Positions 27,929 through 51,397 of a stretch of DNA of 64,000 nucleotides are shown here, piece by piece. The notes below the pieces were generated by a model. The model did not search any database. It was not told where the DNA came from and saw only the letters and a program-made list of their open reading frames with translations. Within the stretch, counting starts at the first letter, position 1; every line of letters begins with the position of its first letter. The position numbers and the translations under genes were made by a program. The stretch is from positions 124,001-188,000 of IMG/VR virus record IMGVR_UViG_3300029267_004162; one strand, 5' to 3'.

Positions 27929-27929
27929 T

Positions 27930-29139: not shown

Positions 29140-29213
29140 GTCATTCTCCACTCGGCGATAAACCTATTTTGTTACGACCCAACACAAACGTGATTCAGTT
29201 GGCTTTGGCTGCC

Positions 29214-29741: not shown

Positions 29742-29894
29742 GGTGGGGTACTGAACCCTACCCACTAGTAGTATAGCAATCAGGAGAGGTTCTGTCAAGT
29801 CCTTTTTTGACCTCCTTGACCCCCCAGGAGAGGCCAGAAAGGGCCACGTTATAGGACGTTCCAGGACGTTCCAGAACGTCCTATAACGTGGCCC
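29742..29894 (-). repeat. copy 1 of ~150-bp hairpin-promoter cassette
   Basis: Near-identical to 32573-32725; contains a perfect 21-bp inverted repeat (29841-29861 / 29874-29894). Confidence 0.95.
29770..29798 (-). promoter_or_regulatory. consensus sigma70 promoter (early)
   Basis: TTGACA-17 nt-TATACT, with a TG dinucleotide before the -10 and an A-tract upstream of the -35. Confidence 0.88.
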
Positions 29895-29955
29895 AGAGAA
29901 GCCCAGAAAGGGGGTATCCAGAGAAGCCCAGAAAAGGGGTATCCAGAGAAACCCA
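29893..29955. repeat. 25-bp tandem direct repeat, ~2.5 copies
   Basis: CCAGAGAAGCCCAGAAAGGGGGTAT / CCAGAGAAGCCCAGAAAAGGGGTAT / CCAGAGAAACCCA. Confidence 0.9.
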
Positions 29956-30007
29956 TGGAAAATGGTGGGAATCGAACCCACACCCCCCCAGCCGAGGCCA
30001 GTGACAG

Positions 30008-30403
30008 TCAGATCCTGGCAATGTCACCTGGGTACTCACCGGTTTCTTCACCCCAAAGACGACGAGGCGCCAGTTGAGTCCCATTCCAGTTGTAGTCAGC
30101 CCCACATTCGCAGGTAGAGGTGAAGCCCGCACAACATACGGTTTCACCACAATCACACTTGACTTCTACCCACCCCGGAACCCTCTGGTCGAAGTCTCGA
30201 ACCTCGTGCTCAAGAATACCTCCACACTCACACTTCATACCGATTTGCTTGCGATTATCGGGAAATTCTAGTTCCACCTTGTCATCAACCGTGTGGATGA
30301 TGGTCACGCCACAGCCACAATCCTCGCACATGGCACTTTCACTATGATGTTGGCGATACTGGTCATCAACGATACGTATTTCAGACATCAACAACCTCCT
30401 CAA
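30008..30403 (-). CDS. Cys-rich Zn-ribbon protein
   Basis: CEDC, CECG, CDCG, CECG...YNWNGTQLAP. Confidence 0.65.
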   Translation of the reverse strand: MRRLLMSEIRIVDDQYRQHHSESAMCEDCGCGVTIIHTVDDKVELEFPDNRKQIGMKCECGGILEHEVRDFDQRVPGWVEVKCDCGETVCCAGFTSTCECGADYNWNGTQLAPRRLWGEETGEYPGDIARI

Positions 30404-30678
30404 ACTCTGTCTTGCTCTGCGAGATAGGCGGCGTAGCAGTCAGGACACGCATCACTAATCGTCTGATCCAGCGGAACCAACCGCCTACAACGAACACAGT
30501 TGATTCTGAGAGAAGAGCCAACTGCTTTTTCCCAACGAGGGATATGAAGGATTGTTTTCTCTCCTCCAAACGTGGTGACTGTAACATGAGCGGCAGGCCC
30601 TTCCCGTTCCACTTCGATGGACTGGATTCCTTGATCCTGCAAGAAGGCCAGGACGGCATCAAGTTGGGTGGCTGACAT
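30400..30678 (-). CDS. small Zn-ribbon protein
   Basis: CVRC...CPDC; AGGAG RBS. Confidence 0.6.
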   Translation of the reverse strand: MSATQLDAVLAFLQDQGIQSIEVEREGPAAHVTVTTFGGEKTILHIPRWEKAVGSSLRINCVRCRRLVPLDQTISDACPDCYAAYLAEQDRV

Positions 30679-30681
30679 GGA

Positions 30682-31245
30682 TCAGTTCTCCTGGTATTCC
30701 ACAAAGTCCCGGTACATGCCACCATCTCGGATAGACACGGTGTCTTCGGTCAGCAGAGCACCATTCATGTAGATGCTCACAGTAACCTCGGTGTACCCGA
30801 TTTCATCCTCGAAAGGATAACCAGCAGACAACTGAAACTGGTACAGCGATTCGTCTTCGCAGTATCCCTGCCGGAAACCAAACGCCACCTTCCCAGATTC
30901 ACCATCGCGGGGGTAGGGCGTTCCATCGGAGTCCATCACCCAAAGTTGCATGGGAACGATCTCGTCCCACTCAAACGCGAAGTAGAGGTCATATCCCTCA
31001 GATGGATGCCCCTCCTCATCGTCGGCCAGGGTGTCATCGACATCACCGGCAACCGCTCCCGTATCGGCGGTTACGTTACCGATTGACACGTTAGAGTTAT
31101 CTCCAACCTCGATATTGAAGACATTCGTCGCCACGTCGGTGTCCACGGTCGTATCAAGGCCCAGTTCAACTGGAACGTCTCCAGCGATCGGACAGCCACC
31201 AAGAACGACACACAGCATCAGATTTAGCAGAACGATTGCTCTCAT
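30682..31245 (-). CDS. acidic lipoprotein
   Basis: MRAIVLLNLMLCVVLGGC lipobox; D/E-rich. Confidence 0.7.
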   Translation of the reverse strand: MRAIVLLNLMLCVVLGGCPIAGDVPVELGLDTTVDTDVATNVFNIEVGDNSNVSIGNVTADTGAVAGDVDDTLADDEEGHPSEGYDLYFAFEWDEIVPMQLWVMDSDGTPYPRDGESGKVAFGFRQGYCEDESLYQFQLSAGYPFEDEIGYTEVTVSIYMNGALLTEDTVSIRDGGMYRDFVEYQEN

Positions 31246-31248
31246 CGG

Positions 31249-31464
31249 TTACTCTCCTCTCAATTCCCAGCCTTTTTGGAACCCCTCGCAGTACGCTTGG
31301 AACCAAATTTCCGCCTTCGAAGTTGCGTGATCGTAACTCATCTCATAATCCACAACCCAACCCCATTGTGGGTCTTTCCGGCATTGCGGATTAAGCGAGG
31401 CGGAGTTTGGGTGCATCGCGATATGCTTTGCGACCGCTTCACTTGCACATGACAGGGTTCTCAT
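31249..31464 (-). CDS. hypothetical protein
   Basis: Packed ORF. Confidence 0.5.
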   Translation of the reverse strand: MRTLSCASEAVAKHIAMHPNSASLNPQCRKDPQWGWVVDYEMSYDHATSKAEIWFQAYCEGFQKGWELRGE

Positions 31465-31628
31465 GCTTTATCCTCTCGCCCCGGTTCCGGTTTCACTTCG
31501 GGCTCTTCTTTGGGGGAGTTGCAATTCGGACAATGCGTAGTCTCAGGTGCTGCGAAGAACTGAAAGTAGCACCCACTGCATCGCACTAATGGCGAATTGC
31601 GACATGGTAAAAACTTAACGGTCTGCAT
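31461..31628 (-). CDS. 55-aa Zn-ribbon microprotein (not in ORF track)
   Basis: MQTVKFLPCRNSPLVRCSGCYFQFFAAPETTHCPNCNSPKEEP...; AAGGA RBS; ATGA overlap with the next gene. Confidence 0.6.
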   Translation of the reverse strand: MQTVKFLPCRNSPLVRCSGCYFQFFAAPETTHCPNCNSPKEEPEVKPEPGREDKA

Positions 31629-31670
31629 AGTGATCCTTTCTGGTCGTTAACATTCATCATCTGCTCCGAT

Positions 31671-32021
31671 TCATTCCCAAGGGAACTTCCCGCAGCGTTC
31701 CACACAATCTTGTAACTCCCGTCTAATCTGACGGACACGTTCTCGGGACAAGCCATGCTTCTTGGCGAGAGTGGCACCCTGGCCCTGCTCCATTCCCAGG
31801 ATATCGGCTACGATTCCAGGGTGGTTCCGTTCGATTTTGCCAAACGGGGTGGTTATACCACGTTGAGGTAGTAAATCCCGATAAAGAACTGCCAACTTCT
31901 TCACGACCTCAGCCATGCCTTGGGATACGTCCCATTGCTCGGCGATCTCCCTGCATGAGAGGGAAAGGATGCCCGGCTCGCGGGCCAGTTTATCTACGGT
32001 TGTAGTCATCTGTTTGCACAC
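31671..32021 (-). CDS. HTH protein with sigma70 region-4-like recognition helix
   Basis: LAKKHGLSRERVRQI; a second HTH-like segment LSCREIAEQWDVSQG; AGGAGGT RBS. Confidence 0.7.
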   Translation of the reverse strand: MCKQMTTTVDKLAREPGILSLSCREIAEQWDVSQGMAEVVKKLAVLYRDLLPQRGITTPFGKIERNHPGIVADILGMEQGQGATLAKKHGLSRERVRQIRRELQDCVERCGKFPWE

Positions 32022-32126
32022 CTCCTATACTCCTGACGGGTGAGCCTGAAAACGAACCTCGTTCGAGCGGGGTTTTGTTCGTTTGGCTCCAACGTTACGA
32101 AAATTAGGGGTTGGCGACCCGTCCAC

Positions 32127-32489
32127 TCAATCAGTTCTCAGTGGCGTCCATTCACCACTCAGAAGGAGCATTAGACACCCTTCATCACCTTCGAGGTTTA
32201 AGATACCATCGAGTTGGCGAACCCATCCATCTTCTAACCATTGTTCTTGGCTGGTGGGCGGCGTTTCAGAGTCGGGGTCATACTCACTACAAACTGGGTA
32301 GATTCTCGTAGGGTCAAACTCTACCGTTTCTGCCGTTGCCAACGCTTCTTGTGCTTTCTTCGCCGATAGTTTCTCTTGTGCTTGTGCACTAACACTTCGA
32401 AGATGTACTAGTAAATTGGCAGCGCTGGCTCCCAGCTGCCTTCGCAAGCGGGGCCGACCGGCAGGATCATTCTTATCGTTGTGCTTCAT
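32127..32489 (-). CDS. hypothetical protein, first gene after early promoter
   Basis: GAGGAG RBS; 120 aa. Confidence 0.6.
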   Translation of the reverse strand: MKHNDKNDPAGRPRLRRQLGASAANLLVHLRSVSAQAQEKLSAKKAQEALATAETVEFDPTRIYPVCSEYDPDSETPPTSQEQWLEDGWVRQLDGILNLEGDEGCLMLLLSGEWTPLRTD

Positions 32490-32572
32490 TGTGATTCTCC
32501 TCGGCGAGGTAGAGCGAATGGAAAACGCCCGGCCCCGACCGGACTGGGACTACCACGGACGGGACGACGCGA

Positions 32573-32725
32573 GGTGGGGTACTGAACCCTACCCACTAGT
32601 AGTATAGCAATCAGGAAGGCTCGTGTCAAGTCCTTTTTTGACCTCCTTGACCCCCAGGAGAAGGTCAGAAAGGGACACGTTATCGGACGTTCTAGAACTT
32701 CTAGGAACGTCCGATAACATGCCCC
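32573..32725 (-). repeat. copy 2 of ~150-bp hairpin-promoter cassette
   Basis: Near-identical to 29742-29894; the hairpin shows a compensatory base change. Confidence 0.95.
32601..32629 (-). promoter_or_regulatory. consensus sigma70 promoter (early, leftward)
   Basis: TTGACA-17 nt-TATACT on the - strand. Confidence 0.88.
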
Positions 32726-32777
32726 TTGGGGGGCTCCCCTTGGGGGTATATTCAAGACCAGCCTGGAAACCCGAGGG

Positions 32778-32807
32778 TTGACAGATACCCCCCTCTTGTG
32801 GTATAAT
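32778..32807 (+). promoter_or_regulatory. consensus sigma70 promoter (rightward, divergent)
   Basis: TTGACA-18 nt-TATAAT with extended -10 TG, upstream of the only + strand operon. Confidence 0.85.
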
Positions 32808-32901
32808 GGAAATAGGATCAACATAGGAAAACGGCCCGATACCCAGTGGGTGCTCACCCACCGACCGCAGTCCATGATGATCCGTGAGGAAGGAAGTACC
32901 C

Positions 32902-33741
32902 ATGCCTAAGAAGAAATCCGCCCCGAAATCCAAATCCGTAAAGAAGAAACCCACCCCTGGATCCATACTTGATCAACTAGAGGAGGCCGCACCCGCTCCC
33001 AAGAAGAAGATGCCCTCCAAACGGACTGCGCCAATCAAGACCCTCACCGAGGAACAGACCGTCGCAATAGCCAACCTCGCTCTGCTCACGAGTCGTGCCA
33101 AAGACTTAGACGCCCAGATTAAAGCTCTAAGGGCCGACCTGCATGAGGACATCCTAGAATGGTTCAACCAACGGTGTGAAGAAGACGGGGCGGCCCATTC
33201 CTCCGCTGATTTGGCCCCTCACCTAGAAACGAGTATGGCTTACGTTTTGAGCGTTCGTCCAGGATTCGACAGGAAAAGTCTGCGTGAATTCGTCAAGTCT
33301 ACCTTTGGGAAGGGGGCATCCAAGACCTGGAAAGCTTTAACCGAAGATGGGGGTCCGATTCAAATCACCGCTCTCCCACTAAAGCTAGACCAAGACCATG
33401 TTGCTCAAGTTATTTCCCAGCACCGGGGTGGAAGTGTGCTGAGTAAAAACAGTGGTCTGAGTGCTTCACAAATCAAACTCATGGGTGGCCGTCGAGTGAT
33501 TCTTGCCCTCAAACCACAGTTTGCGACCGGTGACAAAGTAGAACAGGTCGTAAAGGATCTGAAAGAGGCACTCGGGGATAAATTCGCCCAGTTTTTCGAA
33601 ATTGAGGTTGTTGTTGACGTTAGTGGAGATTTCCTCAAGAACAGAATCTCTTCCCAATCCGCATTAAGGGATGCCGCAAAACAGGCCATTGAAGTGGGCT
33701 GTGGTAAAGTTGTCCAGTACATCCGACCAGTGTCCAAATAA
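32902..33741 (+). CDS. hypothetical protein with Lys/Pro-rich N-terminus and coiled coil
   Basis: MPKKKSAPKSKSVKKKP...; AGGAAGG RBS. Confidence 0.7.
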   Translation: MPKKKSAPKSKSVKKKPTPGSILDQLEEAAPAPKKKMPSKRTAPIKTLTEEQTVAIANLALLTSRAKDLDAQIKALRADLHEDILEWFNQRCEEDGAAHSSADLAPHLETSMAYVLSVRPGFDRKSLREFVKSTFGKGASKTWKALTEDGGPIQITALPLKLDQDHVAQVISQHRGGSVLSKNSGLSASQIKLMGGRRVILALKPQFATGDKVEQVVKDLKEALGDKFAQFFEIEVVVDVSGDFLKNRISSQSALRDAAKQAIEVGCGKVVQYIRPVSK

Positions 33742-33753
33742 GGGAGTGATCAC

Positions 33754-34026
33754 ATGGCTGCTAAGATATCGGATATGATCAAAGAAATGGACTTTTTTGA
33801 CTTGCGATCCTTAATGAACGCCGTCAAGGAAGAGATCAGTTTGCGAAAGAGCGCTGACCGCTTCGTAATCGGTCAGAACGTAATAGTAAGACTGGGGGAT
33901 GAAATCGAATACCTCGCTGTAGTCGTCGATCACCAGTCAACCCAAAAGATCAAGCTGGAATTCCCAGACGGAACAACCAAAATCGTCTTGGCACACCGCG
34001 CTAGACCAAATGTGGGAAAATCATGA
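33754..34026 (+). CDS. small protein with SH3-like C-terminal half
   Basis: GGGAG RBS; FVIGQNVIVRLG...KIKLEFPDG. Confidence 0.6.
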   Translation: MAAKISDMIKEMDFFDLRSLMNAVKEEISLRKSADRFVIGQNVIVRLGDEIEYLAVVVDHQSTQKIKLEFPDGTTKIVLAHRARPNVGKS

Positions 34027-34601
34027 TCGCAATAACAGCCCTGCGACTCCCAGACAAACCTCAACGATGTACGACTGATGCTCTACATCGTTTGGATGAT
34101 GGGAGGCACGTAGCCCAGAAGAAATGGAATGGATGGCGGTGCGTTATCGTCTGGCAAAAACCCACATTACAAATCCTGTCCCGCTACAAGACCAGAACGA
34201 TCCCAATTTCTAAGTCGGCAAAGCAAGCAATCACCGCTATGTGTTTGCGTGCCAAGACCAAGGGACTTGTTCTGGATGCGGAGTACATGGGAATGAGGAG
34301 TGGAGCCCGTCGAGAAAGCGTGGTTCTGCTAGACGTGTTGTATCTCGAAGGGGTATGGCAAGGCAGCAAGCCATGGAATGAACGAGATGCCATGTTGCAA
34401 AGTCTACCGGTGTCTGCCCCCATACAACTGGTGGAGAATTTCTACACCGACTTCGCTGAAACGTATGCTCATCAACAACAAGATTCAGAAAGCGAGGGTC
34501 TCGTGATAAAGAGACTCAAGAGCAAACTGATCGGAGGAATCGATGGTTGCAAGAGGAATCCTCACTGGTTCAAGGTTAGGTACCGGGAGGATCAAGTATG
34601 A
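34023..34601 (+). CDS. ATP-dependent ligase-like nucleotidyltransferase, adenylation domain only
   Basis: Motif I QKKWNGWR, III LDAEY, IIIa LLDVL, IV EGLVIK, V WFKV; the ORF ends without an OB domain. Confidence 0.8.
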   Translation: MIAITALRLPDKPQRCTTDALHRLDDGRHVAQKKWNGWRCVIVWQKPTLQILSRYKTRTIPISKSAKQAITAMCLRAKTKGLVLDAEYMGMRSGARRESVVLLDVLYLEGVWQGSKPWNERDAMLQSLPVSAPIQLVENFYTDFAETYAHQQQDSESEGLVIKRLKSKLIGGIDGCKRNPHWFKVRYREDQV

Positions 34602-35047: not shown

Positions 35048-35437
35048 CTATTCGCACAACAAATCTTTCTGAGAATGACAGGGAACCACCTGATGCCACT
35101 GAGCCATGTTTTCTTCTATCGTTTTGAGACGTTGGTCTTGTGTGGCGTCTATAGCGGGTACTGTCTGGTTCCACGCTTCTAACCAATCCTCTATCCGCGC
35201 AAGTCTTGCTTCCGTATCCTCGGAAGCAGTTTTCAATGAGGCTAACTCAGCAGCTATATGGCCTTGATGTTTTACACCTGCATCGACCACCTTCCTCATT
35301 TCTGACACTTCTTTTTGTTGATAATCAATTTGCATACGCATAGGCTGAACCATTGCGTATACACCAGCAATGATCGCCAATATCGCTACTACACCCCCGA
35401 ATGCTTTGGCGTTGCCACCACTACTGTCTTCTGGCAT
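35048..35437 (-). CDS. single-pass membrane coiled-coil protein
   Basis: N-terminal TM (FGGVVAILAIIAGVYAMV) followed by heptad-like helices; ends in TAG with an open frame beyond it. Confidence 0.65.
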   Translation of the reverse strand: MPEDSSGGNAKAFGGVVAILAIIAGVYAMVQPMRMQIDYQQKEVSEMRKVVDAGVKHQGHIAAELASLKTASEDTEARLARIEDWLEAWNQTVPAIDATQDQRLKTIEENMAQWHQVVPCHSQKDLLCE

Positions 35438-35873
35438 TTTTTATCCCTGCGTGTACTTGTTGGATTAGTTCACCTGGATCGCCGGCTTTCTCCACGTACG
35501 CGAATGCACCCAGGTTCAGAGCTTCCTTGGCAGAAGCAAGAGTCCCATGGGCTGTGTTGATTATGACGCGAACCTTGCCATTCATGTTCTTGATCTTCGC
35601 CAAGAGTTGGGTGCCATCTAAATCAGGTAAGCGTTGGTCCACTACCGCTACGTCAAAATCCTCATGCTGAACTTGTTCTAAAGCTTCAGTCGCATTCGGA
35701 CAGCCAACAACTTGAAAACCTTCACCCTCCATGAGACCAGTGAGTGTGAATAGTTGTGACTCCTCATCTTCAACGATGAGCAGACGAGCGCGTTTGTTTG
35801 GTGATACCGTAGAATCTGCGAAGAGGAGAATCCACGCTAGACCAGCGAGCCCTATTAGTATAGCTCCCATCAT
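35421..35873 (-). CDS. stand-alone response-regulator receiver domain with N-terminal TM anchor
   Basis: TM MMGAILIGLAGLAWILLF; LLIVEDE, VVDQRLP (phospho-Asp), NTAHG, YVEK; no output domain. Confidence 0.88.
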   Translation of the reverse strand: MMGAILIGLAGLAWILLFADSTVSPNKRARLLIVEDEESQLFTLTGLMEGEGFQVVGCPNATEALEQVQHEDFDVAVVDQRLPDLDGTQLLAKIKNMNGKVRVIINTAHGTLASAKEALNLGAFAYVEKAGDPGELIQQVHAGIKNARRQ

Positions 35874-35874
35874 T

Positions 35875-35982
35875 TCAATCCTTCGGCCAGAACAACCAGT
35901 GATACCAGTGATTAGTAATCCAAGTCGGTTCAAAAAGTAGAATCCACGCCAGACCAGAGAGAGCTATTAGGATAATCCCCAT
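35875..35982 (-). CDS. 35-aa membrane microprotein, paralogue of the receiver's TM anchor (not in ORF track)
   Basis: MGIILIALSGLAWILLFEPTWITNHWYHWLFWPKD; GGAG RBS. Confidence 0.6.
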   Translation of the reverse strand: MGIILIALSGLAWILLFEPTWITNHWYHWLFWPKD

Positions 35983-39514: not shown

Positions 39515-40453
39515 TTACTCGGAAAGAAGAAGAAAAAGACCATTACGAAGGCTATCTAGATCGGGCTGAAACCGCTCTTTGACTTCTTCATCAACCCAGT
39601 TCAAAGCGCGGTGAAGCCCGTGGGAACCAGGCAGGAGATTAGCTCGACAGCGGCTGGCCAATACTCTGGCATAACCAGACGTAATATTGCTACCATCGGG
39701 CTTGGTAATGGTATCTTCGATATGCTTGGAATTACCCCCAGATAAGACAATGCTAAACGCCATTAATTGACTTCTGTTTAAACTGGCCAACGCTTTGGCG
39801 ATTTGAAGGGGGTGTGCTTCGGGCTCAGAAAGTGCCCAATCAAAATGCTTCCCCAAATGGTGTACTCGGCTAGCGAGCAGAGTTTCGAACAATTTGAAGA
39901 CGGGGACTGATTCGGATCGCCTTTGTAAAATTTGTGCCAAACCTCTTTTTTGAAGTCGGCCTTCATTCATAAAGGCGAGATAGTCCAATGCGGCCACTGC
40001 TTCAGGATATTCCCTTATCTCTGTGATAGCTTCAATAACACCATCTTCAATTTCGCAACCTAGAGCAATATACCGTTTTCGCAATCGCCGGATTAAAACA
40101 CCCCCCGATTCTCCGGTTAATTGAAAACAGGTGTACTCCGCATCCTGAGCTTCTTTAATTTTTTCCTCAGGCAACCGCATTAACAGACAGTATCCTAGTT
40201 TCGCTTCCTTTTTTGCCCATCTATCAATTTTCTTTAGGTCAAAACCAGCGAGAACGACGTGGTGATCATGAAAAATACTGGGACCATATTTACCCTCACC
40301 ATGAGTTTGGAGAGCAAAACCGTCCTCTTCTAACCCAGCCAGAAGACGAGCCCAAACGTAATCAGATACTGGGGAGATGAGGTAATAGGGTAATTCCCTC
40401 TCAGTCAAATGACGAATAAGGGCTTTTTGGCTAACCGTCTGTGGTTTAGCCAT
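39515..40453 (-). CDS. divergent DNA Pol III delta (HolA)-like clamp-loader subunit
   Basis: Size ~310 aa; helical pattern (GCEIEDGVIEAI...VFKLFETLL...HPLQIAKAL...LNWVDEEVK); a holB-like gene and a clamp-like gene are nearby. Confidence 0.55.
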   Translation of the reverse strand: MAKPQTVSQKALIRHLTERELPYYLISPVSDYVWARLLAGLEEDGFALQTHGEGKYGPSIFHDHHVVLAGFDLKKIDRWAKKEAKLGYCLLMRLPEEKIKEAQDAEYTCFQLTGESGGVLIRRLRKRYIALGCEIEDGVIEAITEIREYPEAVAALDYLAFMNEGRLQKRGLAQILQRRSESVPVFKLFETLLASRVHHLGKHFDWALSEPEAHPLQIAKALASLNRSQLMAFSIVLSGGNSKHIEDTITKPDGSNITSGYARVLASRCRANLLPGSHGLHRALNWVDEEVKERFQPDLDSLRNGLFLLLSE

Positions 40454-40976
40454 CCCCAGATTCCTCGCCTGTGTAGTATTGGACCCGCCAATACCCATAA
40501 TCTGCGGCTACTTCACATGCTTTAAATATGGGTTGGATTTTTTCACGCTCAGTGGTAAGTATCCGAGTCGTTAACACCCCGTTGGTACCCCTTCTCCGGT
40601 TCTTACGAGCTTGTAACACTTTGGACGTAGGGTCTAGCATCTCTATCTCAACTGCTGAGTTATCAACCAACCAAGTCCCGAGGTTAGAGGCAAGCCACCA
40701 TACTTGATCCACACTCCGGGGGAACCCGTCTACTGCCAAAGGTTTTTCAAGAGCAACGGCTAGTAGAACGGATTCTTTTACCAGGGAACGAACCATGTTT
40801 TCTACCTGGGGATTAGCTAGGTGTGATCCATGTTTGACGAAGAAGTCTTCTCCTAAAAGCACTCGCATCAGCTTTCCACATGACAGAACAATCGTTTCAG
40901 AATTATCGCTTTTGTGGTGATCACACCGATACGATTTTCCGCTACAGGGTAAACCAGTTATGAAGGTTAGCTGCAT
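40446..40976 (-). CDS. adenylate-kinase-like NMP kinase
   Basis: ITGLPCSGKS P-loop, LSCGKLMR, DGFPRSVDQ. Confidence 0.8.
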   Translation of the reverse strand: MQLTFITGLPCSGKSYRCDHHKSDNSETIVLSCGKLMRVLLGEDFFVKHGSHLANPQVENMVRSLVKESVLLAVALEKPLAVDGFPRSVDQVWWLASNLGTWLVDNSAVEIEMLDPTSKVLQARKNRRRGTNGVLTTRILTTEREKIQPIFKACEVAADYGYWRVQYYTGEESGDG

Positions 40977-40986: not shown

Positions 40987-42048
40987 TTAATCCGGGAGTT
41001 GCCTAAGTTCCACTTCATCATTTTTGGGGCCTGTTCCCAGCATCCACAGTTTACACCCGTGAGCATTTAGACACTGCTGCAGTTTTTCGTAAAAAGGCTC
41101 TGGGTCTGTTAGATAATTAACGAAATTCAAAAACATGTAATTTGGACGAACGTGTTGTAGGAATCTTTCTAGTTGCAAAAAGCTGAAATCAAAGACTCTC
41201 CGTACTCGACCTGTGACGGTCGTGTACTCTTCTATTTGTTGACCAATCTTTTCACTAAGGTGCGCCCAGGTTGTTTCTTCATGGTCTGAGTAATAGGGGC
41301 CTGAGGTCGATCCTTCCAGACTACCGACTCGAATGGGATAGGTTCGAATAATTCCTACTATGTCACCATAGTAATCTGGATGGGGTGGAATACCAGCGTT
41401 ATCAAAAGCACGTCCTACCAAACAATCCCGACTGGTGGTGTAGGGGTATTGATGCCCAAAGTTAATGCCGAGATCAAATCCTTGAGCAGTTTCAGAAATC
41501 ACCGCGGCCCCTGCCAACAAAGATTCTCTGACCAGTGTGCCAGTATCAGCAACAAATTTGGCAACACGCAGATCATGTTTAGCAATATTGCTATCTTTGG
41601 GGTCGCGCCGCATCTTACGTATCACGGCTTCAGCACTACCCTGCATGGTGGAACTGATACCAGTCAGTCTTTGTTTCTCAACGTCAGCATCAGCTTGTGA
41701 CAAGACACACGCACGAGGGTGAATAGCCAGGGTGAAATCTCCCCGTTCTTTTTGGGCCGCTGCAACTTCCATTAGTAGGCGATCCACGTCAAATACAGCA
41801 TGAGGTCCAATTATCACGGTGTGGACAGTGGGGAACCATGCGCCTACTGGCAAGGCTTTAGACACATGTTTTTCGCCGGAAACTGGGCCATAAAAAGAAT
41901 GGCCTGCATTGGGCATGTTGTCCCCAACTACTACAGAAACTTGGGGATTCTGCTCGAAGATAAAGGCCAGCAATTTGCCTTTACCGGTTGATCCCCATTG
42001 CCCGTCAATAACTATTGAAAACTTGCCTGTGGGAAACATACTCATCAT
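40987..42048 (-). CDS. purZ: PurZ-type adenylosuccinate synthetase homologue (N6-succino-2-amino-2'-deoxyadenylate synthase)
   Basis: QWGSTGKG (Ser where PurA has the Asp of GDEGKG), NAGH, AQGFDL, YPYTTSR, RTYPIRV, SGPYYSD, TTVTGRVRRVF, FLNFVNY (NFxN rather than PurA TKxD); short 353-aa form. Confidence 0.85.
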   Translation of the reverse strand: MMSMFPTGKFSIVIDGQWGSTGKGKLLAFIFEQNPQVSVVVGDNMPNAGHSFYGPVSGEKHVSKALPVGAWFPTVHTVIIGPHAVFDVDRLLMEVAAAQKERGDFTLAIHPRACVLSQADADVEKQRLTGISSTMQGSAEAVIRKMRRDPKDSNIAKHDLRVAKFVADTGTLVRESLLAGAAVISETAQGFDLGINFGHQYPYTTSRDCLVGRAFDNAGIPPHPDYYGDIVGIIRTYPIRVGSLEGSTSGPYYSDHEETTWAHLSEKIGQQIEEYTTVTGRVRRVFDFSFLQLERFLQHVRPNYMFLNFVNYLTDPEPFYEKLQQCLNAHGCKLWMLGTGPKNDEVELRQLPD

Positions 42049-44898: not shown

Positions 44899-45669
44899 TC
44901 ACTTTATCATTCGAACGATGGGGTAATCATCATGGATTATTGATGATGTAATTTGACAAAGAGAAGACCAAGATAAAACATGCGACTCACTGAACCCAGC
45001 GTGTTTAGCCATTTTTACCAATTCCCCCGGACTAAAAACACCCAGCTTAATTGCCTCGGATGTCTTGTGCAGGTTTTTCCCAACCCGAGTGTTATCAGAG
45101 GCAATACTCATGAAAGCAGAAGTAGCATTGGATACCCAGTCTATATCTAACCCTGACAATTTAATGGACGCTTTGATATCTTTCCGCGACCTACTCCAGG
45201 AATAATTCTGAAGCGCGTGTAAACGAAGGTACCCATCGTAGATATGACCAAAATATACCAGATACGATCCTCCCTTACGTAAAGCGGCGTGCACTTTACG
45301 TAAATGTTTAACCATAGCGGATACGGTGGGGAGTTTGTATTGCATCAACAGGATATTCGTCGTAATGGCTAAATTTATCCCTTGTGGACTTTCCCCTGGT
45401 TCCAATATTTCAACAGAAAAATGGTCAAAGATGCCCTCTTCTGCCCACTTATAATGCACATATTCGGAAGCCTGTAAACAAGAGGGAGTTAAACTAGCCT
45501 TACCCAATTCCCGGTAAAGAACATCTTTAGTATAATCCCCAGTAACCGATATAACTTCCCAGACACTACTCGGGGTTAAACTAGATGCCGCCAAAAGTTT
45601 ATCAGTCACCTCAGGAATGGAAGCGTGATCGACAAACAACAATTCGTAAGTGTCGGGGCACCGATCCAT
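44899..45669 (-). CDS. degenerate class I methyltransferase-like protein
   Basis: VWEVISVTG at the motif I position; HLRKVHAALRKGGSYLV; FSPGELVKMAKHAGFS. Confidence 0.55.
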   Translation of the reverse strand: MDRCPDTYELLFVDHASIPEVTDKLLAASSLTPSSVWEVISVTGDYTKDVLYRELGKASLTPSCLQASEYVHYKWAEEGIFDHFSVEILEPGESPQGINLAITTNILLMQYKLPTVSAMVKHLRKVHAALRKGGSYLVYFGHIYDGYLRLHALQNYSWSRSRKDIKASIKLSGLDIDWVSNATSAFMSIASDNTRVGKNLHKTSEAIKLGVFSPGELVKMAKHAGFSESHVLSWSSLCQITSSIIHDDYPIVRMIK

Positions 45670-46283
45670 TAAAGCAATGACCCCCTAGTCGAACTAACTC
45701 GTTCGATAAATTCCGCTTTAACATGACCCTCTACGAAAGCCCCCAAAACAGTAGTGGTGGTTATTCGAGACGTGGGACTTTGCACTCCTCGACAACTCAT
45801 GCAATTATGCATTGCCTCTACCATCACAGCGGTTCCCCTTGCATGAACACTATTGTGTAAGGTCGTGGCTAGCTCATAGGTGTAGGATTCTTGCAGGATG
45901 GGCTGCTTAGCCATAGTAGTCGCGAGGCGAGTTAGTTTACTAATACCCAGTATTCGGAATTCTTGCCTTTCTGCGGCTGGAACGTAGGCTATGTGAACCA
46001 AAGCCATAACCGGAAGAAGGTGGTGGGGACACATAAAATTCACGATATTTTGCGTACTGCAAATCATTGCATCATACACCCCGTTTCCTTGATCTGGGAA
46101 TGAACAAGAAAGAATTTTGGCGACTTCTTTATTGATCTGATCTTTCGACCACACCATTTCATGCAGGGCTTTAGCAGCTCGCGAATCAGTACCTTTGAAG
46201 TTATATCCGGAGTGGCCCATCTCGGCTAAACCTTCTAGGATTAGCGCGTACCCCGTTTGAAATTTGTCTTCGTTTGATGACAT
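45669..46283 (-). CDS. folE: GTP cyclohydrolase I
   Basis: MCPHHLLP, GISKLTRL, LQESYT, HNCMSCRGV; Zn ligands intact. Confidence 0.93.
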   Translation of the reverse strand: MSSNEDKFQTGYALILEGLAEMGHSGYNFKGTDSRAAKALHEMVWSKDQINKEVAKILSCSFPDQGNGVYDAMICSTQNIVNFMCPHHLLPVMALVHIAYVPAAERQEFRILGISKLTRLATTMAKQPILQESYTYELATTLHNSVHARGTAVMVEAMHNCMSCRGVQSPTSRITTTTVLGAFVEGHVKAEFIERVSSTRGSLL

Positions 46284-47744: not shown

Positions 47745-48266
47745 TTATCCTATCAACTGGGAAAACCCAAATTCATCATCGGGCTCGGACTCATCAGATT
47801 TACCTAACTCATAATCCATCAGGCCATTTTCTATTGATGTGATTTCACAGTGCTCTCCCTGGTAAATAACGACATCCCCCCTCTTCTTCCCCAAAAGCGT
47901 TTGACCAAAGGGAGATTCATAACTTATCACGCCCCCATCGGGGTTGGAGTCAAACGGCCCCAGTACCCTAAAGACAATCGTTTTTGATCCCTTGAAAGTG
48001 ACCTTTGAACCAACCCCCACAACATCGGTTGGAACCTCTGCTTCATCAAGAGGCACAGCCGCAGACAACGATGTTTGTAAATCCTGGAGTCTCTTGGAAA
48101 GAAAATCTCGTTCTTCTATGGCGAATTTCCATTCAGAGTTTTCACTCAGATCTCCGTGTTCAGCCGCTTCACCAATCCTTTTAATCACCGCAGGAAGATC
48201 AACCATTTGCATCTTCTCAGCAAGCAATAACTTGGCATCGATTGCTTGCGTACTATGATAACTCAT
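47745..48266 (-). CDS. greA: transcription elongation factor GreA/GreB
   Basis: HGDLSENSEW (acidic tip intact), VGVGSKV, ISYESPFGQTLLGKKRGD. Confidence 0.9.
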   Translation of the reverse strand: MSYHSTQAIDAKLLLAEKMQMVDLPAVIKRIGEAAEHGDLSENSEWKFAIEERDFLSKRLQDLQTSLSAAVPLDEAEVPTDVVGVGSKVTFKGSKTIVFRVLGPFDSNPDGGVISYESPFGQTLLGKKRGDVVIYQGEHCEITSIENGLMDYELGKSDESEPDDEFGFSQLIG

Positions 48267-48853
48267 TTGGACTCCGTCACTTGAGGAGACAAAGTGAGTT
48301 TCCAATCTCCAAGAGGGAGTTCTACTTGACCATCGTAATCAGGAAAACCTGGGGAAGGGCCATCACCACATTCCCATATATCTGATAACCCCCGATATTT
48401 GCCTTTCAGGTCCATCCCAAACCCAATCACGAACTTGCCCGAAACATCAAGACTAGAGTAATTACCAACATGCCCTGACTTCTTCGTGTCCAGTAAGAAA
48501 CACGCGTCTGCATCTCGAAATCCAAAATCCGCTAGCATGGTCAGAATCTTATCATAAGTCTCGCCTGTGTTTATGATGGCATCAATTACTAGCACAGAAT
48601 AATCGGCTGGGTTGCTTGGCGGTTCCCAATCGTGTGCAATGGTTACCCCACGATCAGCAGAATAAGTAGCCGTCCAAACCGGACGAATTATCATGTCAAT
48701 TCGCAAAGTCCTGAATAGTTCCATTACAAAGAGACTGGCGCCCCACAAGACCGGAACTACAACCACCTTTTCTCCACGGTAGGCATCGTTTATTTGATTG
48801 GCGATTGTATCGATGTGAGTGACAATGTCTCTATGTTCTAGAAATTTTTTCAT
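48263..48853 (-). CDS. HPRT-like phosphoribosyltransferase, paralogue B (altered PRPP loop)
   Basis: VLWGASLF, VLVIDAIINTGET, FVIGFGMDLKGKYRGL. Confidence 0.85.
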   Translation of the reverse strand: MKKFLEHRDIVTHIDTIANQINDAYRGEKVVVVPVLWGASLFVMELFRTLRIDMIIRPVWTATYSADRGVTIAHDWEPPSNPADYSVLVIDAIINTGETYDKILTMLADFGFRDADACFLLDTKKSGHVGNYSSLDVSGKFVIGFGMDLKGKYRGLSDIWECGDGPSPGFPDYDGQVELPLGDWKLTLSPQVTESK

Positions 48854-49377
48854 GACCTTTCATCCTGACCCTTACATTCTTCGATTATGCATATGTCTGG
48901 TAAGCCCCGATATCTACCACCCATGTCCAATCCAAACCCTACTACAAATTTATCCGGGATAACAAATCCAGTATAATTTGGGCAACGGCTAGATTTCTCT
49001 TTGTCCAACAAAAAACACGTTCTTGTGTCGTGAAACCCGGAACCTTTCAACAAAGACACTACGCCATTGATGGTTTTACCAGAGTCCAAAATGTCGTCTA
49101 CTATTAACGCCGAACAGGCGGCGGGATCTATTTGGGATAAATCCCAATCATGTTTGATAGATAAATTACCCTGAGAAGTCCCAGAATAAGAAGTAGCCCA
49201 TATTGGAAGAATAGTCACGGTAGTTTTTAAACGATTAAATAGCTCCATCGAAAAAGTGCAAGCACCCCACAAAACGGGAACAACTATTAGTCTTCGGCCC
49301 TCAAAGTCTGAGTCAATCTGACTAGCTAATTGATCGATACGAACAAGAATCTGCTGGTGTTCCAATAGTTTTTTCAA
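48850..49377 (-). CDS. hpt: hypoxanthine/guanine phosphoribosyltransferase, paralogue A
   Basis: VLWGACTF, ATSYSG, LIVDDILDSGKT, FVVGFGLDMGGRYRGLP. Confidence 0.9.
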   Translation of the reverse strand: MKKLLEHQQILVRIDQLASQIDSDFEGRRLIVVPVLWGACTFSMELFNRLKTTVTILPIWATSYSGTSQGNLSIKHDWDLSQIDPAACSALIVDDILDSGKTINGVVSLLKGSGFHDTRTCFLLDKEKSSRCPNYTGFVIPDKFVVGFGLDMGGRYRGLPDICIIEECKGQDERS

Positions 49378-51329: not shown

Positions 51330-51371
51330 AAATATAATAACGAGGCCCAAGGAGAGTATCCTTGAGCCTCG
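51330..51371 (-). terminator. intrinsic terminator
   Basis: Minus strand CGAGGCTCAAGGA-TACTC-TCCTTGGGCCTCG-TTATTATATTT. Confidence 0.7.
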
Positions 51372-51397
51372 CAGGAGGGGGAGGGGAAGGGGTTTGG

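What the first reader, a model, noticed from the sequence alone, without database searches (positions are those of the whole stretch)
48263..49377. Tandem HPRT paralogues, one with a rewired catalytic loop (DDILD to DAIIN)
Seen: two adjacent paralogues (MKKLLEH.../MKKFLEH...). Copy A has the canonical LIVDDILDSGKT; copy B has LVIDAIINTGET while keeping the rest of the fold. Known: the last Asp of this loop is the HPRT general base acting at purine N7, and APRTs lack it. Inference: copy B may have been retuned for a base without an N7-H requirement (a 7-deazapurine such as preQ0, or 2,6-diaminopurine). It could instead be a non-catalytic partner subunit. This would link salvage to the PurZ and FolE chemistry.
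Basis: partly seen in the sequence, partly recalled or inferred. Interest (0 to 1): 0.72.

Follow-up and report, generated by a model that had tools for sequence, protein, structure and literature searches.

The report
Phage HPRT pair, one copy rewired
A marine jumbo phage that appears to rewrite both of its purines carries two adjacent HPRT (purine-salvage) genes: one ordinary copy, of a kind that turns out to travel repeatedly with viral 7-deazaguanine genes, and one unique copy that has lost three substrate-contact residues and whose job is still open.

Summary
Window 48850-49377(-) (copy A, 175 aa) and 48263-48853(-) (copy B, 196 aa) are sister paralogues of the classical HPRT family: 44% identical, with ATGA overlap. 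A keeps every near-invariant HPRT residue. B has lost three: Asp134->Ala, Asp137->Asn, Lys165->Thr. It keeps all PPi, Mg and 5'-phosphate contacts, the base sandwich and a lineage-specific dimer interface. B has no relatives other than A among 1.84 billion representative proteins.

The host genome is a 262.65 kb marine jumbo phage. It encodes PurZ plus PurB, a full preQ1 pathway (FolE, QueD, QueE, QueC, QueF) and a TGT/DpdA-like base-exchange enzyme.

New here: canonical HPRT genes sit beside 7-deazaguanine genes in 20 of 80 viral HPRT loci, and 5 of 80 viral QueC loci hold an HPRT.

Best reading: A is a normal guanine/hypoxanthine salvage enzyme serving the phage's guanine-nucleotide economy. 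B is a selected, ligand-binding derivative that is no longer a conventional HGPRT. It is either re-tuned to another purine-like base or a partner subunit.

It is not required either, because a transglycosylase is present. Only biochemistry can settle B's function.

The parts
48850..49377 (-). Copy A: canonical HPRT-family phosphoribosyltransferase, 175 aa, TTG start
   Evidence: PF00156 at 3.5e-18. TIGR01203 at 113.7 bits. PDB 3o7m HPRT at 1.6e-24. Best outside relatives are bacterial HPRTs at about 42% identity. Keeps all 19 near-invariant family residues.
49072..49098 (-). Copy A PRPP/5'-phosphate loop DDILDSGKT (residues 94-102). This equals E. coli Hpt E103 D104 .. D107 .. T111 in PDB numbering.
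   Evidence: Alignment with E. coli Hpt and with a panel of 138 homologues.
49000..49002 (-). Copy A Lys126, the equivalent of human Lys165 / E. coli Lys135 (contacts purine O6/N7)
   Evidence: Contact roles come from PMC2228302, Table 2.
48263..48853 (-). Copy B: diverged HPRT paralogue, 196 aa, ATG start overlapping A's stop
   Evidence: PF00156 at 4.5e-12. TIGR01203 at 76.9 bits. PDB 6igs at 8.4e-15. Sister of A with support 0.99; branch lengths 0.95 (B) and 0.37 (A). Its only relative better than 1e-16 among 1.84 billion representative proteins is A.
48557..48583 (-). Copy B loop DAIINTGET (residues 91-99): the Asp134-equivalent is Ala92 and the Asp137-equivalent is Asn95
   Evidence: At these positions the panel has D in 131/138 and D in 128/138 (E 9, N 1). 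E. coli mapping.
48485..48487 (-). Copy B Thr123 at the Lys165-equivalent position
   Evidence: The panel has K 121 and R 15 of 138 at this position. There is no indel between A and B in this segment.
48266..48358 (-). Copy B C-terminal extension (residues about 166-196), Pro/Gly/Asp-rich, absent from A and other HPRTs
   Evidence: Alignments. AF2 pLDDT is below 50 for 171-183 and 190-196. Structural matches cover only residues 1-166/168.
47745..48266 (-). GreA/GreB-like transcription factor. Its probable start (MSYHSTQ...) overlaps B's stop by ATGA.
   Evidence: PF01272 and PF03449. Junction sequence.
45669..46283 (-). FolE (GTP cyclohydrolase I), first step of 7-deazaguanine synthesis, in the same co-directional gene string
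   Evidence: PF01227 at 1.3e-33. FolE NCBIfam models are the best hits.
40987..42048 (-). PurZ homologue (succino-amino-deoxyadenylate synthase type), 353 aa
   Evidence: PDB phiVC8 PurZ 6fm1 at 2.2e-59 and S-2L PurZ 7odx at 2.7e-40, against PurA at 1e-12 to 1e-20. NCBIfam NF038379 PurZ scores 214 bits (under its 300-bit cut-off), against at most 118 bits for PurA models.
40446..40976 (-). Small P-loop nucleotide kinase-like protein next to PurZ (weak adenylate-kinase similarity)
   Evidence: PF00406 at 4.2e-4, below cut-off. TIGR01351 at 3e-5. A lead only.

Best explanation
The two genes are a lineage-specific tandem duplication of a phage-borne HPRT.

Copy A is a working 6-oxopurine phosphoribosyltransferase (guanine or hypoxanthine + PRPP -> GMP or IMP). 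It is one example of a recurrent viral pairing of a canonical HPRT with 7-deazaguanine genes. By inference, its job is the phage's guanine-nucleotide economy. This phage draws on one guanine pool for dGTP, for dZ (PurZ/PurB start from dGMP) and for preQ1 (FolE starts from GTP). Its TGT/DpdA-like enzyme frees one guanine base for every preQ base it inserts. A would put that guanine back into the pool and remove a competitor of the exchange reaction.

Copy B is maintained by selection and still has an intact phosphoribosyl/PPi/Mg site and the hydrophobic base sandwich. The two polar side chains on the purine N7/O6 edge have been swapped (Asp->Asn, Lys->Thr), and one ribose contact is lost (Asp->Ala). 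B is therefore no longer a conventional HGPRT. I think it most likely still binds PRPP and a purine-like ring, and acts, as a homo-oligomer or with A, on a base other than guanine or hypoxanthine.

Shown: paralogy, residue pattern, genomic context, and the co-occurrence statistics. Inferred: A's physiological role, B's ligand binding, and any catalysis by B.
For: Paralogy and asymmetric divergence.

A is canonical. It keeps 19 of 19 near-invariant residues, and its relatives are named HPRT.

B keeps 15 of 19 near-invariant residues, including loop-II Tyr64, Gly97/Thr99 (5'-phosphate), Phe141 and Ile93 (base sandwich), Asp148 (Mg) and Arg154 (PPi). This is despite a branch of about 0.95 substitutions per site. 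The three radical changes fall only on residues that contact purine N7/O6 or the ribose hydroxyls (contacts from PMC2228302).

None of 138 homologues combines the three changes.

Of 16 residues shared by A and B but rare in the family, 9 lie in the predicted dimer interface (OR 5.2, p = 0.003).

B models as a confident HPRT fold.

Context: PurZ, PurB, FolE/QueD/QueE/QueC/QueF, and a TGT-like enzyme with DSGGYQ, a nucleophile-Asp segment and CxCxxC..H aligned in register to E. coli Tgt.

Recurrence: 20 of 80 viral HPRT loci have 7-deazaguanine genes within 10 kb (15 with two or more families), and all of those HPRTs have canonical active sites. 5 of 80 viral QueC loci have an HPRT. At least 10 of these loci carry phage replication genes. 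Only 18 of 50,697 deposited phage records show any HPRT match.
Against: Nothing here shows catalysis or ligand binding by either copy.

Loss of the second acidic residue of the PRPP motif may cripple B for any base.

The T. brucei APRT1/APRT2 tandem pair shows that a PRT paralogue with an intact PRPP motif can be inactive on every base tested (PMC8836349). The same pattern of retained PRPP-site residues is also expected for a PRPP- or nucleotide-sensing regulatory subunit.

B has no relatives, so there is no independent evolutionary evidence that its new residue set is a working solution. No polymorphism was available for dN/dS: the second contig is 100% identical, and the sequencing runs are held as contigs.

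The guanine-recycling role of A is inferred from pathway logic and co-occurrence, not shown. The co-occurring loci are partly non-independent, since eight belong to one group. The baseline frequency of Que genes in random viral loci was not measured. The HPRT search patterns favoured canonical motifs.
Confidence: 0.4

Rival explanations
1. Copy B is a catalytically dead or very weak pseudoenzyme that co-assembles with copy A (a 'prozyme'-type or regulatory subunit). It tunes A's activity or its sensitivity to PRPP or nucleotides through the dimer interface that organises loops I and IV.
For: Three near-invariant substrate-contact residues are lost. A and B are translationally coupled. Lineage-specific interface residues are retained in both. 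The A+B prediction scored 0.56 against a best control of 0.00. The tool's verdict was 'weak support': the mark was reached by 51 of 78 solved complexes and 2 of 108 mismatched pairs, but at 0.60 or under by only 5 of those 78 solved complexes and by all 4 mismatches that passed. The predicted interface is the canonical HPRT one. Dimerisation is known to position loop I Lys and loop IV Arg of the active site (PMC2228302). PRTFDC1 is a precedent for an HPRT paralogue of doubtful activity with a proposed PRPP-dependent regulatory role (PMC3144895).
Against: The heterodimer prediction and the interface conservation are equally expected if B forms homodimers, and any two HPRT paralogues would score alike. 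B-GreA coupling is the same as A-B coupling, so coupling says little. A purely structural partner would not need Tyr64, Thr99, Asp148 and Arg154, all of which are retained. In the one tested purine-PRT tandem pair (T. brucei APRT1/2) no heterodimer forms.
Confidence: 0.3
2. One reading: copy B is a 7-deazapurine phosphoribosyltransferase (preQ0, preQ1 or CDG + PRPP). It would work like TubE/ToyH and open a nucleotide-level, pre-replicative route for 7-deazaguanine into DNA or into a small-molecule product.
For: The phage makes these bases. Both side chains that touch N7 (Asp137, Lys165) are replaced in B by smaller neutral H-bonding residues. That would make room for a C7 substituent. TubE shows that a purine-type PRT can use CDG (PMC6112128). 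The phage has its own RNR and small kinases.
Against: A TGT/DpdA-superfamily enzyme is present beside QueC/QueF, and the literature finds a DpdA in every 7-deazaguanine virus (PMC10516641). There is no GMP-reductase/IMPDH-type gene. TubE belongs to a different PRT subgroup. HPRTs next to viral Que genes elsewhere are canonical, not B-like. 7-deazaguanines keep O6, which Lys165 normally clamps.
Confidence: 0.12
3. Copy B has shifted to 6-aminopurines (adenine or 2,6-diaminopurine, the Z base). It returns them to the nucleotide pool of a Z-genome phage.
For: An Asn amide plus a Thr hydroxyl can read a 6-amino/N7 edge, where Asp-/Lys+ reads 6-oxo/N7-H (inference from the contacts). Asp148 and the loop-IV backbone, which read the 2-amino group, are kept. 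What sets this phage apart from other HPRT-carrying viruses is PurZ/PurB. From memory, unverified here: a Lys-to-Ser change at this position let a protozoan HGXPRT accept adenine, and a Sulfolobus APRT is thought to derive from a 6-oxopurine PRT.
Against: No source of free Z base is evident. No PNP, adenine/adenosine deaminase or DatZ-type HD gene was found. The AdSS genes near HPRT in other viruses are PurA-type, so there is no recurrent HPRT-PurZ link. Hosts normally have Apt.
Confidence: 0.12
4. Copy B is a functionless duplicate on its way to loss.
For: It has a 2.6-fold longer branch than A, has lost three key residues, has no relatives, and sits in a jumbo phage with room for spare genes.
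Against: The frame is intact and embedded in a chain of overlapping genes. Identical sequence occurs in four runs from three studies. It keeps 15 of 19 near-invariant residues despite about 0.95 substitutions per site. Interface residues are preferentially retained. The fold is predicted with confidence.
Confidence: 0.07

Closest known systems
Bacterial hypoxanthine(-guanine) phosphoribosyltransferase (E. coli Hpt, TIGR01203)
   Same: Both copies share the fold and the family. Copy A also shares every catalytic and substrate-contact residue: Ser-Tyr loop II, the acidic pair, Asp107, Lys135, Phe156, Asp163 and Arg169 in E. coli numbering.
   Different: The genes are phage-encoded and tandemly duplicated. 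Both copies score under the equivalog cut-off and have Trp at the variable loop-I position. Copy B has Ala, Asn and Thr at the Asp104, Asp107 and Lys135 equivalents, plus a roughly 30-residue C-terminal extension.
Human PRTFDC1, the HPRT1 paralogue
   Same: It is an HPRT-family duplicate whose enzymatic activity is doubtful, with a proposed PRPP-dependent regulatory role and a possible interaction with HPRT (PMC3144895). It appears among the PDB hits of both copies as 2jbh.
   Different: It is a vertebrate gene, is not in tandem with HPRT1, and is much closer in sequence to its active paralogue. From memory it changes only the Asp137 position, whereas copy B changes three positions.
Trypanosoma brucei APRT1/APRT2 tandem pair
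   Same: Two purine-PRT paralogues sit in tandem. One is active. The other keeps the PRPP motif but has no detectable activity on any base tested, and its function is unknown (PMC8836349).
   Different: They belong to the APRT family, not the HPRT family, and are 22% identical. The two proteins sit in different cell compartments and do not heterodimerise. Here the two genes are translationally coupled and 44% identical.
TubE / ToyH, the 7-deazapurine phosphoribosyltransferases of tubercidin and toyocamycin biosynthesis
   Same: These are type I purine-type PRTs encoded alongside FolE/QueD/QueE(/QueC) genes. TubE puts CDG on PRPP (PMC6112128).
   Different: They come from actinomycete secondary-metabolite clusters with a GMP-reductase-like enzyme, which is absent here. 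TubE's reference structure (Sulfolobus 4Z1O type) is not among the PDB relatives of A or B at E <= 0.01. Their sequences could not be obtained for a residue comparison.
Viral 7-deazaguanine DNA-modification systems (FolE-QueD-QueE-QueC(-QueF) plus DpdA)
   Same: The genome has the full base pathway and a TGT/DpdA-superfamily enzyme. The literature states that every such virus has a DpdA and that insertion is post-replicative (PMC10516641).
   Different: The two main papers on these systems do not mention a phosphoribosyltransferase at all (0 occurrences). Here an HPRT is a recurrent neighbour of these genes in several viral lineages. This phage also carries PurZ/PurB.

Membership tests
HPRT / 6-oxopurine PRT (TIGR01203, EC 2.4.2.8) | Type I PRT fold of the HPRT kind | tested here: met
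   Both copies hit PF00156. All best PDB sequence hits are HPRTs. The AF2 model of B has pLDDT 85, and its top 50 Foldseek hits are all HPRT/HGPRT with query TM 0.70-0.76.
HPRT / 6-oxopurine PRT (TIGR01203, EC 2.4.2.8) | Score above the curated equivalog cut-off (150 bits) | tested here: not met
   A scores 113.7 bits and B 76.9 bits. Both are divergent members.
HPRT / 6-oxopurine PRT (TIGR01203, EC 2.4.2.8) | Acidic pair of the PRPP motif (human Glu133-Asp134), which contacts the ribose hydroxyls | tested here: inconclusive
   Met in A (Asp94-Asp95). Not met in B (Asp91-Ala92). The panel has Asp at the second position in 131/138.
HPRT / 6-oxopurine PRT (TIGR01203, EC 2.4.2.8) | Asp137-type residue at purine N7 | tested here: inconclusive
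   Met in A (Asp98). Not met in B (Asn95). The panel has D 128, E 9 and N 1 of 138.
HPRT / 6-oxopurine PRT (TIGR01203, EC 2.4.2.8) | Lys165-type residue that clamps the exocyclic O6 (6-oxo specificity) | tested here: inconclusive
   Met in A (Lys126). Not met in B (Thr123). The panel has K 121 and R 15 of 138. Contacts.
HPRT / 6-oxopurine PRT (TIGR01203, EC 2.4.2.8) | Loop II Ser-Tyr, 5'-phosphate loop Gly/Thr, stacking Phe, Asp193 and Arg199 | tested here: met
   A has S63 Y64 G100 T102 F144 D151 R157. B has T63 Y64 G97 T99 F141 D148 R154.
HPRT / 6-oxopurine PRT (TIGR01203, EC 2.4.2.8) | Catalysis of guanine/hypoxanthine + PRPP -> GMP/IMP | not testable with these tools
   Needs an enzyme assay or genetic complementation.
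TubE/ToyH-type 7-deazapurine PRT | Sequence kinship with TubE and its Sulfolobus-type purine PRT relatives | tested here: not met
   TubE's reference structure 4Z1O is absent from the PDB hits of A and B at E <= 0.01. The TubE/ToyH sequences themselves were not obtainable.
TubE/ToyH-type 7-deazapurine PRT | Cluster partners that process the deazapurine nucleotide (GMP-reductase-like ToyE/TubD) | tested here: not met
   No PF00478 match in the genome.
TubE/ToyH-type 7-deazapurine PRT | Activity on CDG or preQ0 | not testable with these tools
   Needs an enzyme assay.
Pseudoenzyme partner subunit ('prozyme' type) | Loss of catalytic residues in one paralogue | tested here: met
   B has lost three near-invariant contact residues.
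Pseudoenzyme partner subunit ('prozyme' type) | Physical complex with the active paralogue | tested here: inconclusive
   Complex prediction scored 0.56 against a best control of 0.00, verdict 'weak support'. The mark was reached by 51 of 78 solved complexes and 2 of 108 mismatched pairs, but at 0.60 or under by only 5 of those 78 and by all 4 mismatches that passed. Paralogues of a homodimeric family are expected to pass.
PurZ (neighbouring gene, window 40987-42048) | Closer to characterised PurZ than to PurA, with the short (~350 aa) length | tested here: met
   6fm1 at 2.2e-59 and 7odx at 2.7e-40, against PurA at 1e-12 or weaker, and archaeal short AdSS at 2.4e-20. NF038379 scores 214 bits, under its 300-bit cut-off, against at most 118 bits for PurA models.
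TGT/DpdA superfamily (622-aa ORF, genome 98692-100560) | DSGGxQ catalytic-Asp motif, nucleophile Asp, and CxCxxC..H zinc site on a TIM-barrel | tested here: met
   The motifs are invariant in alignment A2. hhalign to E. coli Tgt gives probability 73.7%, E = 2.9e-5, over 223 columns in register. Atlas look-alikes carry PF01702 and DpdA. The Pfam TGT and DpdA models and PADLOC give no hit, and the AF2 model is poor. It is therefore a member of the superfamily, with the subfamily unassigned.

The most novel reading that the evidence does not exclude
Copy B is an active phosphoribosyltransferase for a non-canonical purine that this phage itself makes or uses: preQ0, preQ1 or CDG, or 2,6-diaminopurine. 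That would give a phage a nucleotide-level (pre-replicative or pool-level) entry point for modified purines. [quoted passage not shown] In this reading the recurrent HPRT neighbours of viral Que genes would be part of that metabolism, not simple guanine salvage.
Probability: 0.2. Interest if true: 0.85.

Novelty: new variant of a known kind. Interest (0 to 1): 0.58.

Why it matters
There are three reasons.

1. HPRT is almost absent from deposited phage genomes. Yet this work finds canonical HPRT genes repeatedly embedded in viral 7-deazaguanine gene clusters, a companion gene that the main descriptions of those systems do not mention. It suggests a testable point of physiology: base-exchange modification liberates as much guanine as it inserts preQ, and phages may need to recycle or remove that guanine.

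2. Copy B is a natural experiment on the HPRT active site. All phosphoribosyl/PPi contacts are kept, while both polar readers of the purine N7/O6 edge are exchanged. Finding its ligand would either reveal a new base specificity in a well-studied drug-target family or give the first phage example of a PRT pseudoenzyme subunit.

3. The host genome combines PurZ/PurB with a full preQ1 pathway and a TGT-like enzyme. Both purines of its DNA may therefore be non-canonical. No paper describing this combination turned up in the library search.

Tried and rejected
Close annotated relatives. Megablast of 10 kb against 50,697 phage records found nothing.

Relatives of B. The word-indexed search found only B itself. 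Three viral-contig scans found only a 100% identical contig. The exhaustive search found no B-type clade.

dN/dS or polymorphism. This was impossible. The second contig is identical over 20.6 kb, and the four public runs are held as contigs with all words shared. No RNA run was listed.

DpdA detection. Pfam TGT, Pfam DpdA, PADLOC, PHROGs and PDB sequence search were all negative. The AF2 model was too poor for a fold search. The question was settled by motifs, the atlas and hhalign instead.

MazZ/DatZ-type genes, PRPP synthetase, IMPDH/GMP reductase, PNP, adenosine/adenine deaminase and guanylate kinase. No Pfam match for any of them.

Contexts of rare panel variants at the same positions (P0117, P0064). 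Uninformative.

TubE/ToyH sequences. Not obtainable; the supplement figure is an image.

The recollected Lys-to-Ser/adenine mutagenesis in a protozoan HGXPRT. It could not be verified in the library.

The 'W at the loop-I Lys68 position' as a diagnostic. Rejected, because that column varies naturally (K 58, N 28, T 20, R 7).

G001's PRT 'lacking Lys165'. Withdrawn as a probable alignment artefact, because its close relatives have Arg there.

An HPRT-PurZ association in other viruses. Rejected: the neighbouring AdSS genes are PurA-type.

Promoter/terminator scan. Nothing beyond chance, except one strong hairpin at 51372-51340.

Search failures. Two QueC alignments failed as search queries. The record of the TGT-like homologue P0153 is not held.
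Full report
OBSERVATION.

Copy A is at 48850-49377 (175 aa), with a TTG start six bases after GAGGG. Copy B is at 48263-48853 (196 aa). A's stop overlaps B's start (ATGA). B's stop overlaps the probable ATG of the next gene, a GreA/GreB-like factor, in the same way.

A and B are 44% identical over 162 residues, E = 2e-52. Both are type I phosphoribosyltransferases (PF00156). Their best curated model is HGPRTase TIGR01203, at 113.7 and 76.9 bits, both below the 150-bit equivalog cut-off. All their best solved-structure relatives are HPRT/HGPRTs.

WHAT IS DIFFERENT IN B.

I aligned A and B with 138 homologues from an exhaustive search and with E. coli Hpt. In E. coli PDB numbering, E103/D104/D107/K135/F156/D163/R169 correspond to:
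- A: D94/D95/D98/K126/F144/D151/R157.
- B: D91/A92/N95/T123/F141/D148/R154.

These positions match human E133/D134/D137/K165/F186/D193/R199. Their contacts are tabulated in PMC2228302: Glu133/Asp134 contact ribose O3', Asp137 contacts N7, Lys165 contacts O6 and N7, Asp193 contacts N2 and Mg, and Arg199 contacts PPi.

Of 19 columns that are at least 88% conserved in the panel, A keeps 19 and B keeps 15. B's changes are Ser->Thr (conservative), Asp134->Ala (panel D 131/138), Asp137->Asn (D 128, E 9, N 1) and Lys165->Thr (K 121, R 15). No panel member combines the three radical changes.

The Trp that both copies have at the loop-I 'Lys68' position is not diagnostic, because that column varies naturally (K 58, N 28, T 20).

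B also has a C-terminal extension of about 30 residues. It is not modelled with confidence (pLDDT below 50), while residues 1-165 model as a confident HPRT fold (mean pLDDT 85). The top 50 Foldseek matches are all HPRT/HGPRT.

ORIGIN AND SELECTION.

Among 1.84 billion representative proteins, B's best relative is A (2.1e-39). The next best is at 1.3e-16 and 33% identity, so there is no B-type clade. A's best outside relatives are bacterial proteins named HPRT, at about 42% identity.

In a tree, A and B are sisters (support 0.99). B's branch is 2.6 times longer than A's (0.95 against 0.37 substitutions per site). This is a lineage-specific duplication with asymmetric divergence.

dN/dS could not be computed. 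The only other contig is 100% identical over 20.6 kb, and the four public runs that hold the virus are kept as contigs. Those runs are marine sediment and seawater metagenomes from three studies.

Two indirect signs argue against decay. First, B retains all PPi, Mg and 5'-phosphate contacts, the catalytic-loop Tyr and the hydrophobic base sandwich, despite its long branch. Second, of 16 residues that A and B share but that are rare (under 10%) in the family, 9 lie in the predicted dimer interface, which covers 37 of 157 positions (odds ratio 5.2, Fisher p = 0.003). The caveat is that the interface comes from a predicted model and overlaps the loop I/IV active-site region.

A+B COMPLEX.

The prediction scored 0.56 against a best control of 0.00, and the tool's verdict was 'weak support'. 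The mark was reached by 51 of 78 solved complexes and 2 of 108 mismatched pairs. At 0.60 or under it was reached by only 5 of those 78 solved complexes and by all 4 mismatches that passed. The interface is the canonical HPRT dimer interface. Two paralogues of a homodimeric family are expected to pass, so this does not separate a heteromer from homomers.

THE GENOME AROUND THE PAIR.

The window is part of a 262,650-bp virus record that CheckV rates 100% complete. The pair sits in a co-directional replication and nucleotide-metabolism string: clamp-loader delta', FEN, A, B, GreA-like, clamp-like, FolE, ORF256. DnaB, a NYN-domain protein, helicases, SbcCD-like genes, RNase HII, PurZ and gyrase B are nearby.

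The adenylosuccinate-synthetase homologue at 40987-42048 is PurZ-type. It matches phiVC8 PurZ at 2.2e-59 and S-2L PurZ at 2.7e-40, against PurA at 1e-12 or weaker. The NCBIfam PurZ model scores 214 bits (under its 300-bit cut-off), against at most 118 bits for PurA models. The phage also has its own PurB (TIGR00928, 312 bits, E = 4e-93).

It encodes the whole preQ1 base pathway:
- FolE, in the window.
- QueD.
- A QueE-type radical-SAM protein.
- QueC, above the equivalog cut-off.
- A second QueC-like protein.
- QueF type II, above cut-off.

DOES THE PHAGE NEED A PRT TO PUT 7-DEAZAGUANINE INTO DNA?

The Pfam TGT and DpdA models, PADLOC, PHROGs and the PDB sequence search all failed to find a transglycosylase. 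However, a 622-aa ORF lies two genes from the QueC-like/QueF/QueC cluster, at genome 98692-100560. It has CxCxxC followed by His at +22. With its two homologues it shares an invariant DSGG[F/Y]Q motif.

Its language-model look-alikes are viral clusters carrying PF01702 TGT and DpdA (score 0.94, 206-213 shared features). A profile comparison with E. coli Tgt aligns 223 columns in register (probability 73.7%, E = 2.9e-5). The aligned features include DSGGFQ, the nucleophile-Asp segment and the CxCxxC...HN zinc site. NCBIfam gives a weak TgtA hit on the same motif. The AF2 model was too poor to use.

I conclude that a TGT/DpdA-superfamily base-exchange enzyme is present. This agrees with the published statement that every 7-deazaguanine virus has a DpdA and that insertion is post-replicative (PMC10516641). 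A PRT step is therefore not required.

A RECURRENT PAIRING.

Only 18 of 50,697 deposited phage records show any HPRT match, and most of those are short unannotated pieces or bacterial records. IMG/VR, in contrast, holds at least 168 HPRT-like loci.

Forward survey. I took 79 of the 80 best loci (the phage's own contig set aside) plus one distant locus found earlier, and searched the 10-kb flanks with this phage's and a second virus's pathway proteins.
- 20 of 80 loci have at least one of FolE, QueC, QueD, QueE or a TGT-like gene.
- 15 have two or more families, usually on the same strand and 0-5 kb away.
- Three further loci have AdSS genes. These are PurA-type, not PurZ.

Reverse survey. 5 of 80 viral QueC loci carry an HPRT-family gene, and two of those are contigs already seen.

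At least ten of the associated loci also carry PolB, a gp44-type clamp loader or FEN, so they are viral replication modules. Eight belong to one related group, so the count of independent lineages is smaller, at roughly five.

Every pathway-associated HPRT has the canonical Asp134/Asp137/Lys-or-Arg165/Asp193/Arg199 set. The caveat is that the search patterns favoured canonical motifs. No other locus has a tandem pair.

The two main papers on phage 7-deazaguanines contain no occurrence of 'phosphoribosyltransferase'.

INTERPRETATION.

Copy A fits the recurrent pattern of a normal 6-oxopurine PRT attached to the 7-deazaguanine system. The simplest mechanism, which is inferred, is guanine economy. 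GTP is the precursor of preQ bases. dGMP is the substrate of PurZ, by established knowledge of Z-genome phages. Each TGT-type exchange releases one guanine, which also competes for the enzyme. An HPRT returns that guanine to GMP.

Copy B is unique. Its pattern keeps the phosphoribosyl, PPi and Mg site, the Tyr loop and the base sandwich, while both polar side chains on the N7/O6 edge are replaced by neutral H-bonding residues and one ribose contact is lost. This looks more like a re-tuned or ligand-sensing site than random decay.

It is compatible with several readings:
(a) A C7-substituted 7-deazaguanine, since both N7 contacts are reduced in size.
(b) A 6-aminopurine such as adenine or 2,6-diaminopurine. 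An Asn amide reads N6/N7, and the 2-amino contacts are kept.
(c) A PRPP- or nucleotide-binding but non-catalytic partner of A.

Precedents exist for each:
- TubE uses CDG (PMC6112128), but it belongs to another PRT subgroup.
- PRTFDC1 is an HPRT paralogue of doubtful activity (PMC3144895).
- T. brucei APRT2 is a tandem PRT paralogue that is inactive on every base tried and does not heterodimerise (PMC8836349).

From memory and not verified here:
- Asp137 substitutions lower kcat by one to two orders of magnitude but do not abolish activity. PDB entries 1I0L and 1I13 show that such mutants were studied.
- UPRTs naturally have Asp-Pro in place of the acidic pair.

So none of B's changes alone proves inactivity.

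VERDICT.

My probabilities for the B-specific readings:
- The overall best explanation (A canonical and serving guanine economy, B a selected, ligand-competent non-HGPRT acting on another base): 0.4.
- B as a non-catalytic partner subunit: 0.3.
- Within the active-enzyme reading, a 7-deazapurine substrate and a 6-aminopurine substrate: about 0.12 each.
- Decay: 0.07.

The finding is a new variant of a known family. The new elements are the unique residue set of B and the previously unremarked HPRT/7-deazaguanine pairing in viruses.

Noticed in passing
window 40987-42048 (PurZ); L024:1474-2817 (PurB, genome 23173-24516); window 45669-46283 (FolE); L008:2692-4560, 6482-7216, 7937-8398, 10049-10822 (TGT-like, QueC-like, QueF, QueC); L009:1471-1923 (QueD); L010:1090-1878 (QueE): One jumbo phage combines a Z-base module (PurZ plus its own PurB) with a complete preQ1 pathway and a TGT/DpdA-like enzyme. 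Both A and G of its DNA may therefore be replaced or modified. No MazG- or HD-type (MazZ/DatZ-like) gene was found with Pfam models. The only paper in the library holding 'PurZ', 'DpdA' and 'phage' together mentions them in passing.
   Followed up: partly
L030-L108, L013, L113-L191 (IMG/VR loci): Canonical HPRT genes lie within 10 kb of FolE/QueC/QueD/QueE/TGT-like genes in 20 of 80 viral HPRT loci, and 5 of 80 viral QueC loci carry an HPRT. Example gene order in IMGVR_UViG_3300010297_003953: FolE, ORF335, QueC, ORF407 (DSGG motif), PolB, ORF249, PRT. The baseline and the phylogenetic independence were not properly controlled.
   Followed up: partly
L008:5223-6485 (-), L008:7213-7932 (-), L008:8376-8717 (-), L008:6482-7216 (-): The QueC/QueF cluster holds several extra genes. 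One is a 420-aa protein with weak full-length similarity to the ATP-grasp ligase PurD (1.1e-9). Another is a second QueC-like protein that also resembles QatC. There are also two ORFs with no family hit. An amine-acylating ATP-grasp enzyme beside QueF could mean further derivatisation of the preQ1 aminomethyl group.
   Followed up: no
L008:4572-5111 (-): A 179-aa ORF has OrfB_IS605 and Cas12f1-like TNB domains (a TnpB-type fragment). It sits between the TGT-like gene and the QueC-like/QueF genes.
   Followed up: no
window 44899-45669 (-): A 256-aa ORF starts on the last base of FolE, so it is probably co-translated. It has no hit in Pfam, PHROGs, PADLOC or NCBIfam. Its position suggests a role in the 7-deazaguanine pathway.
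   Followed up: partly
window 47745-48266 (-): A phage-encoded GreA/GreB-like transcript-cleavage factor is translationally coupled to copy B. The ORF caller's TTG start at 48305 is probably wrong, and the ATG at 48266 overlaps B's stop.
   Followed up: partly
window 16348-17850 (-), 35421-35933 (-); window about 16000-34000: The phage carries a PAS-PAS-HisKA-HATPase histidine kinase and a separate receiver-domain protein. The block from about 16 to 34 kb has higher G+C (0.50-0.53 against about 0.45) and holds tRNA-Met and tRNA-Leu, an NAD-dependent ligase (21482-23356) and a discoidin-like domain protein. An ATP-dependent ligase fragment lies at 34023-34601.
   Followed up: no
genome ends (G000:C1:1-60 and 262591-262650): Both ends of the contig lie in the same GAGGAAGAG-type repeat, which would code for acidic residues. 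The assembly probably broke inside a repeat, and the record may be a circularly permuted complete genome even though it is classed as 'linear'.
   Followed up: no
window 51340-51372 (-): A strong terminator-like hairpin (14 pairs, 8 G-C, then a T-run) lies between a small lipoprotein-like ORF and the clamp-loader gene. It probably marks the upstream end of the transcription unit that contains the HPRT pair. Terminator-like hits in the region number 8, against 3.4 +/- 1.7 in shuffles.
   Followed up: no
L066:5779-6777, L077:5600-6598, L043:10818-11972: Some viral contigs carry a PurA-type adenylosuccinate synthetase 0.3-3.5 kb from a canonical HPRT. Two of these are short (332 aa). This looks like a separate purine-interconversion module in viruses, and it is not PurZ.
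   Followed up: partly
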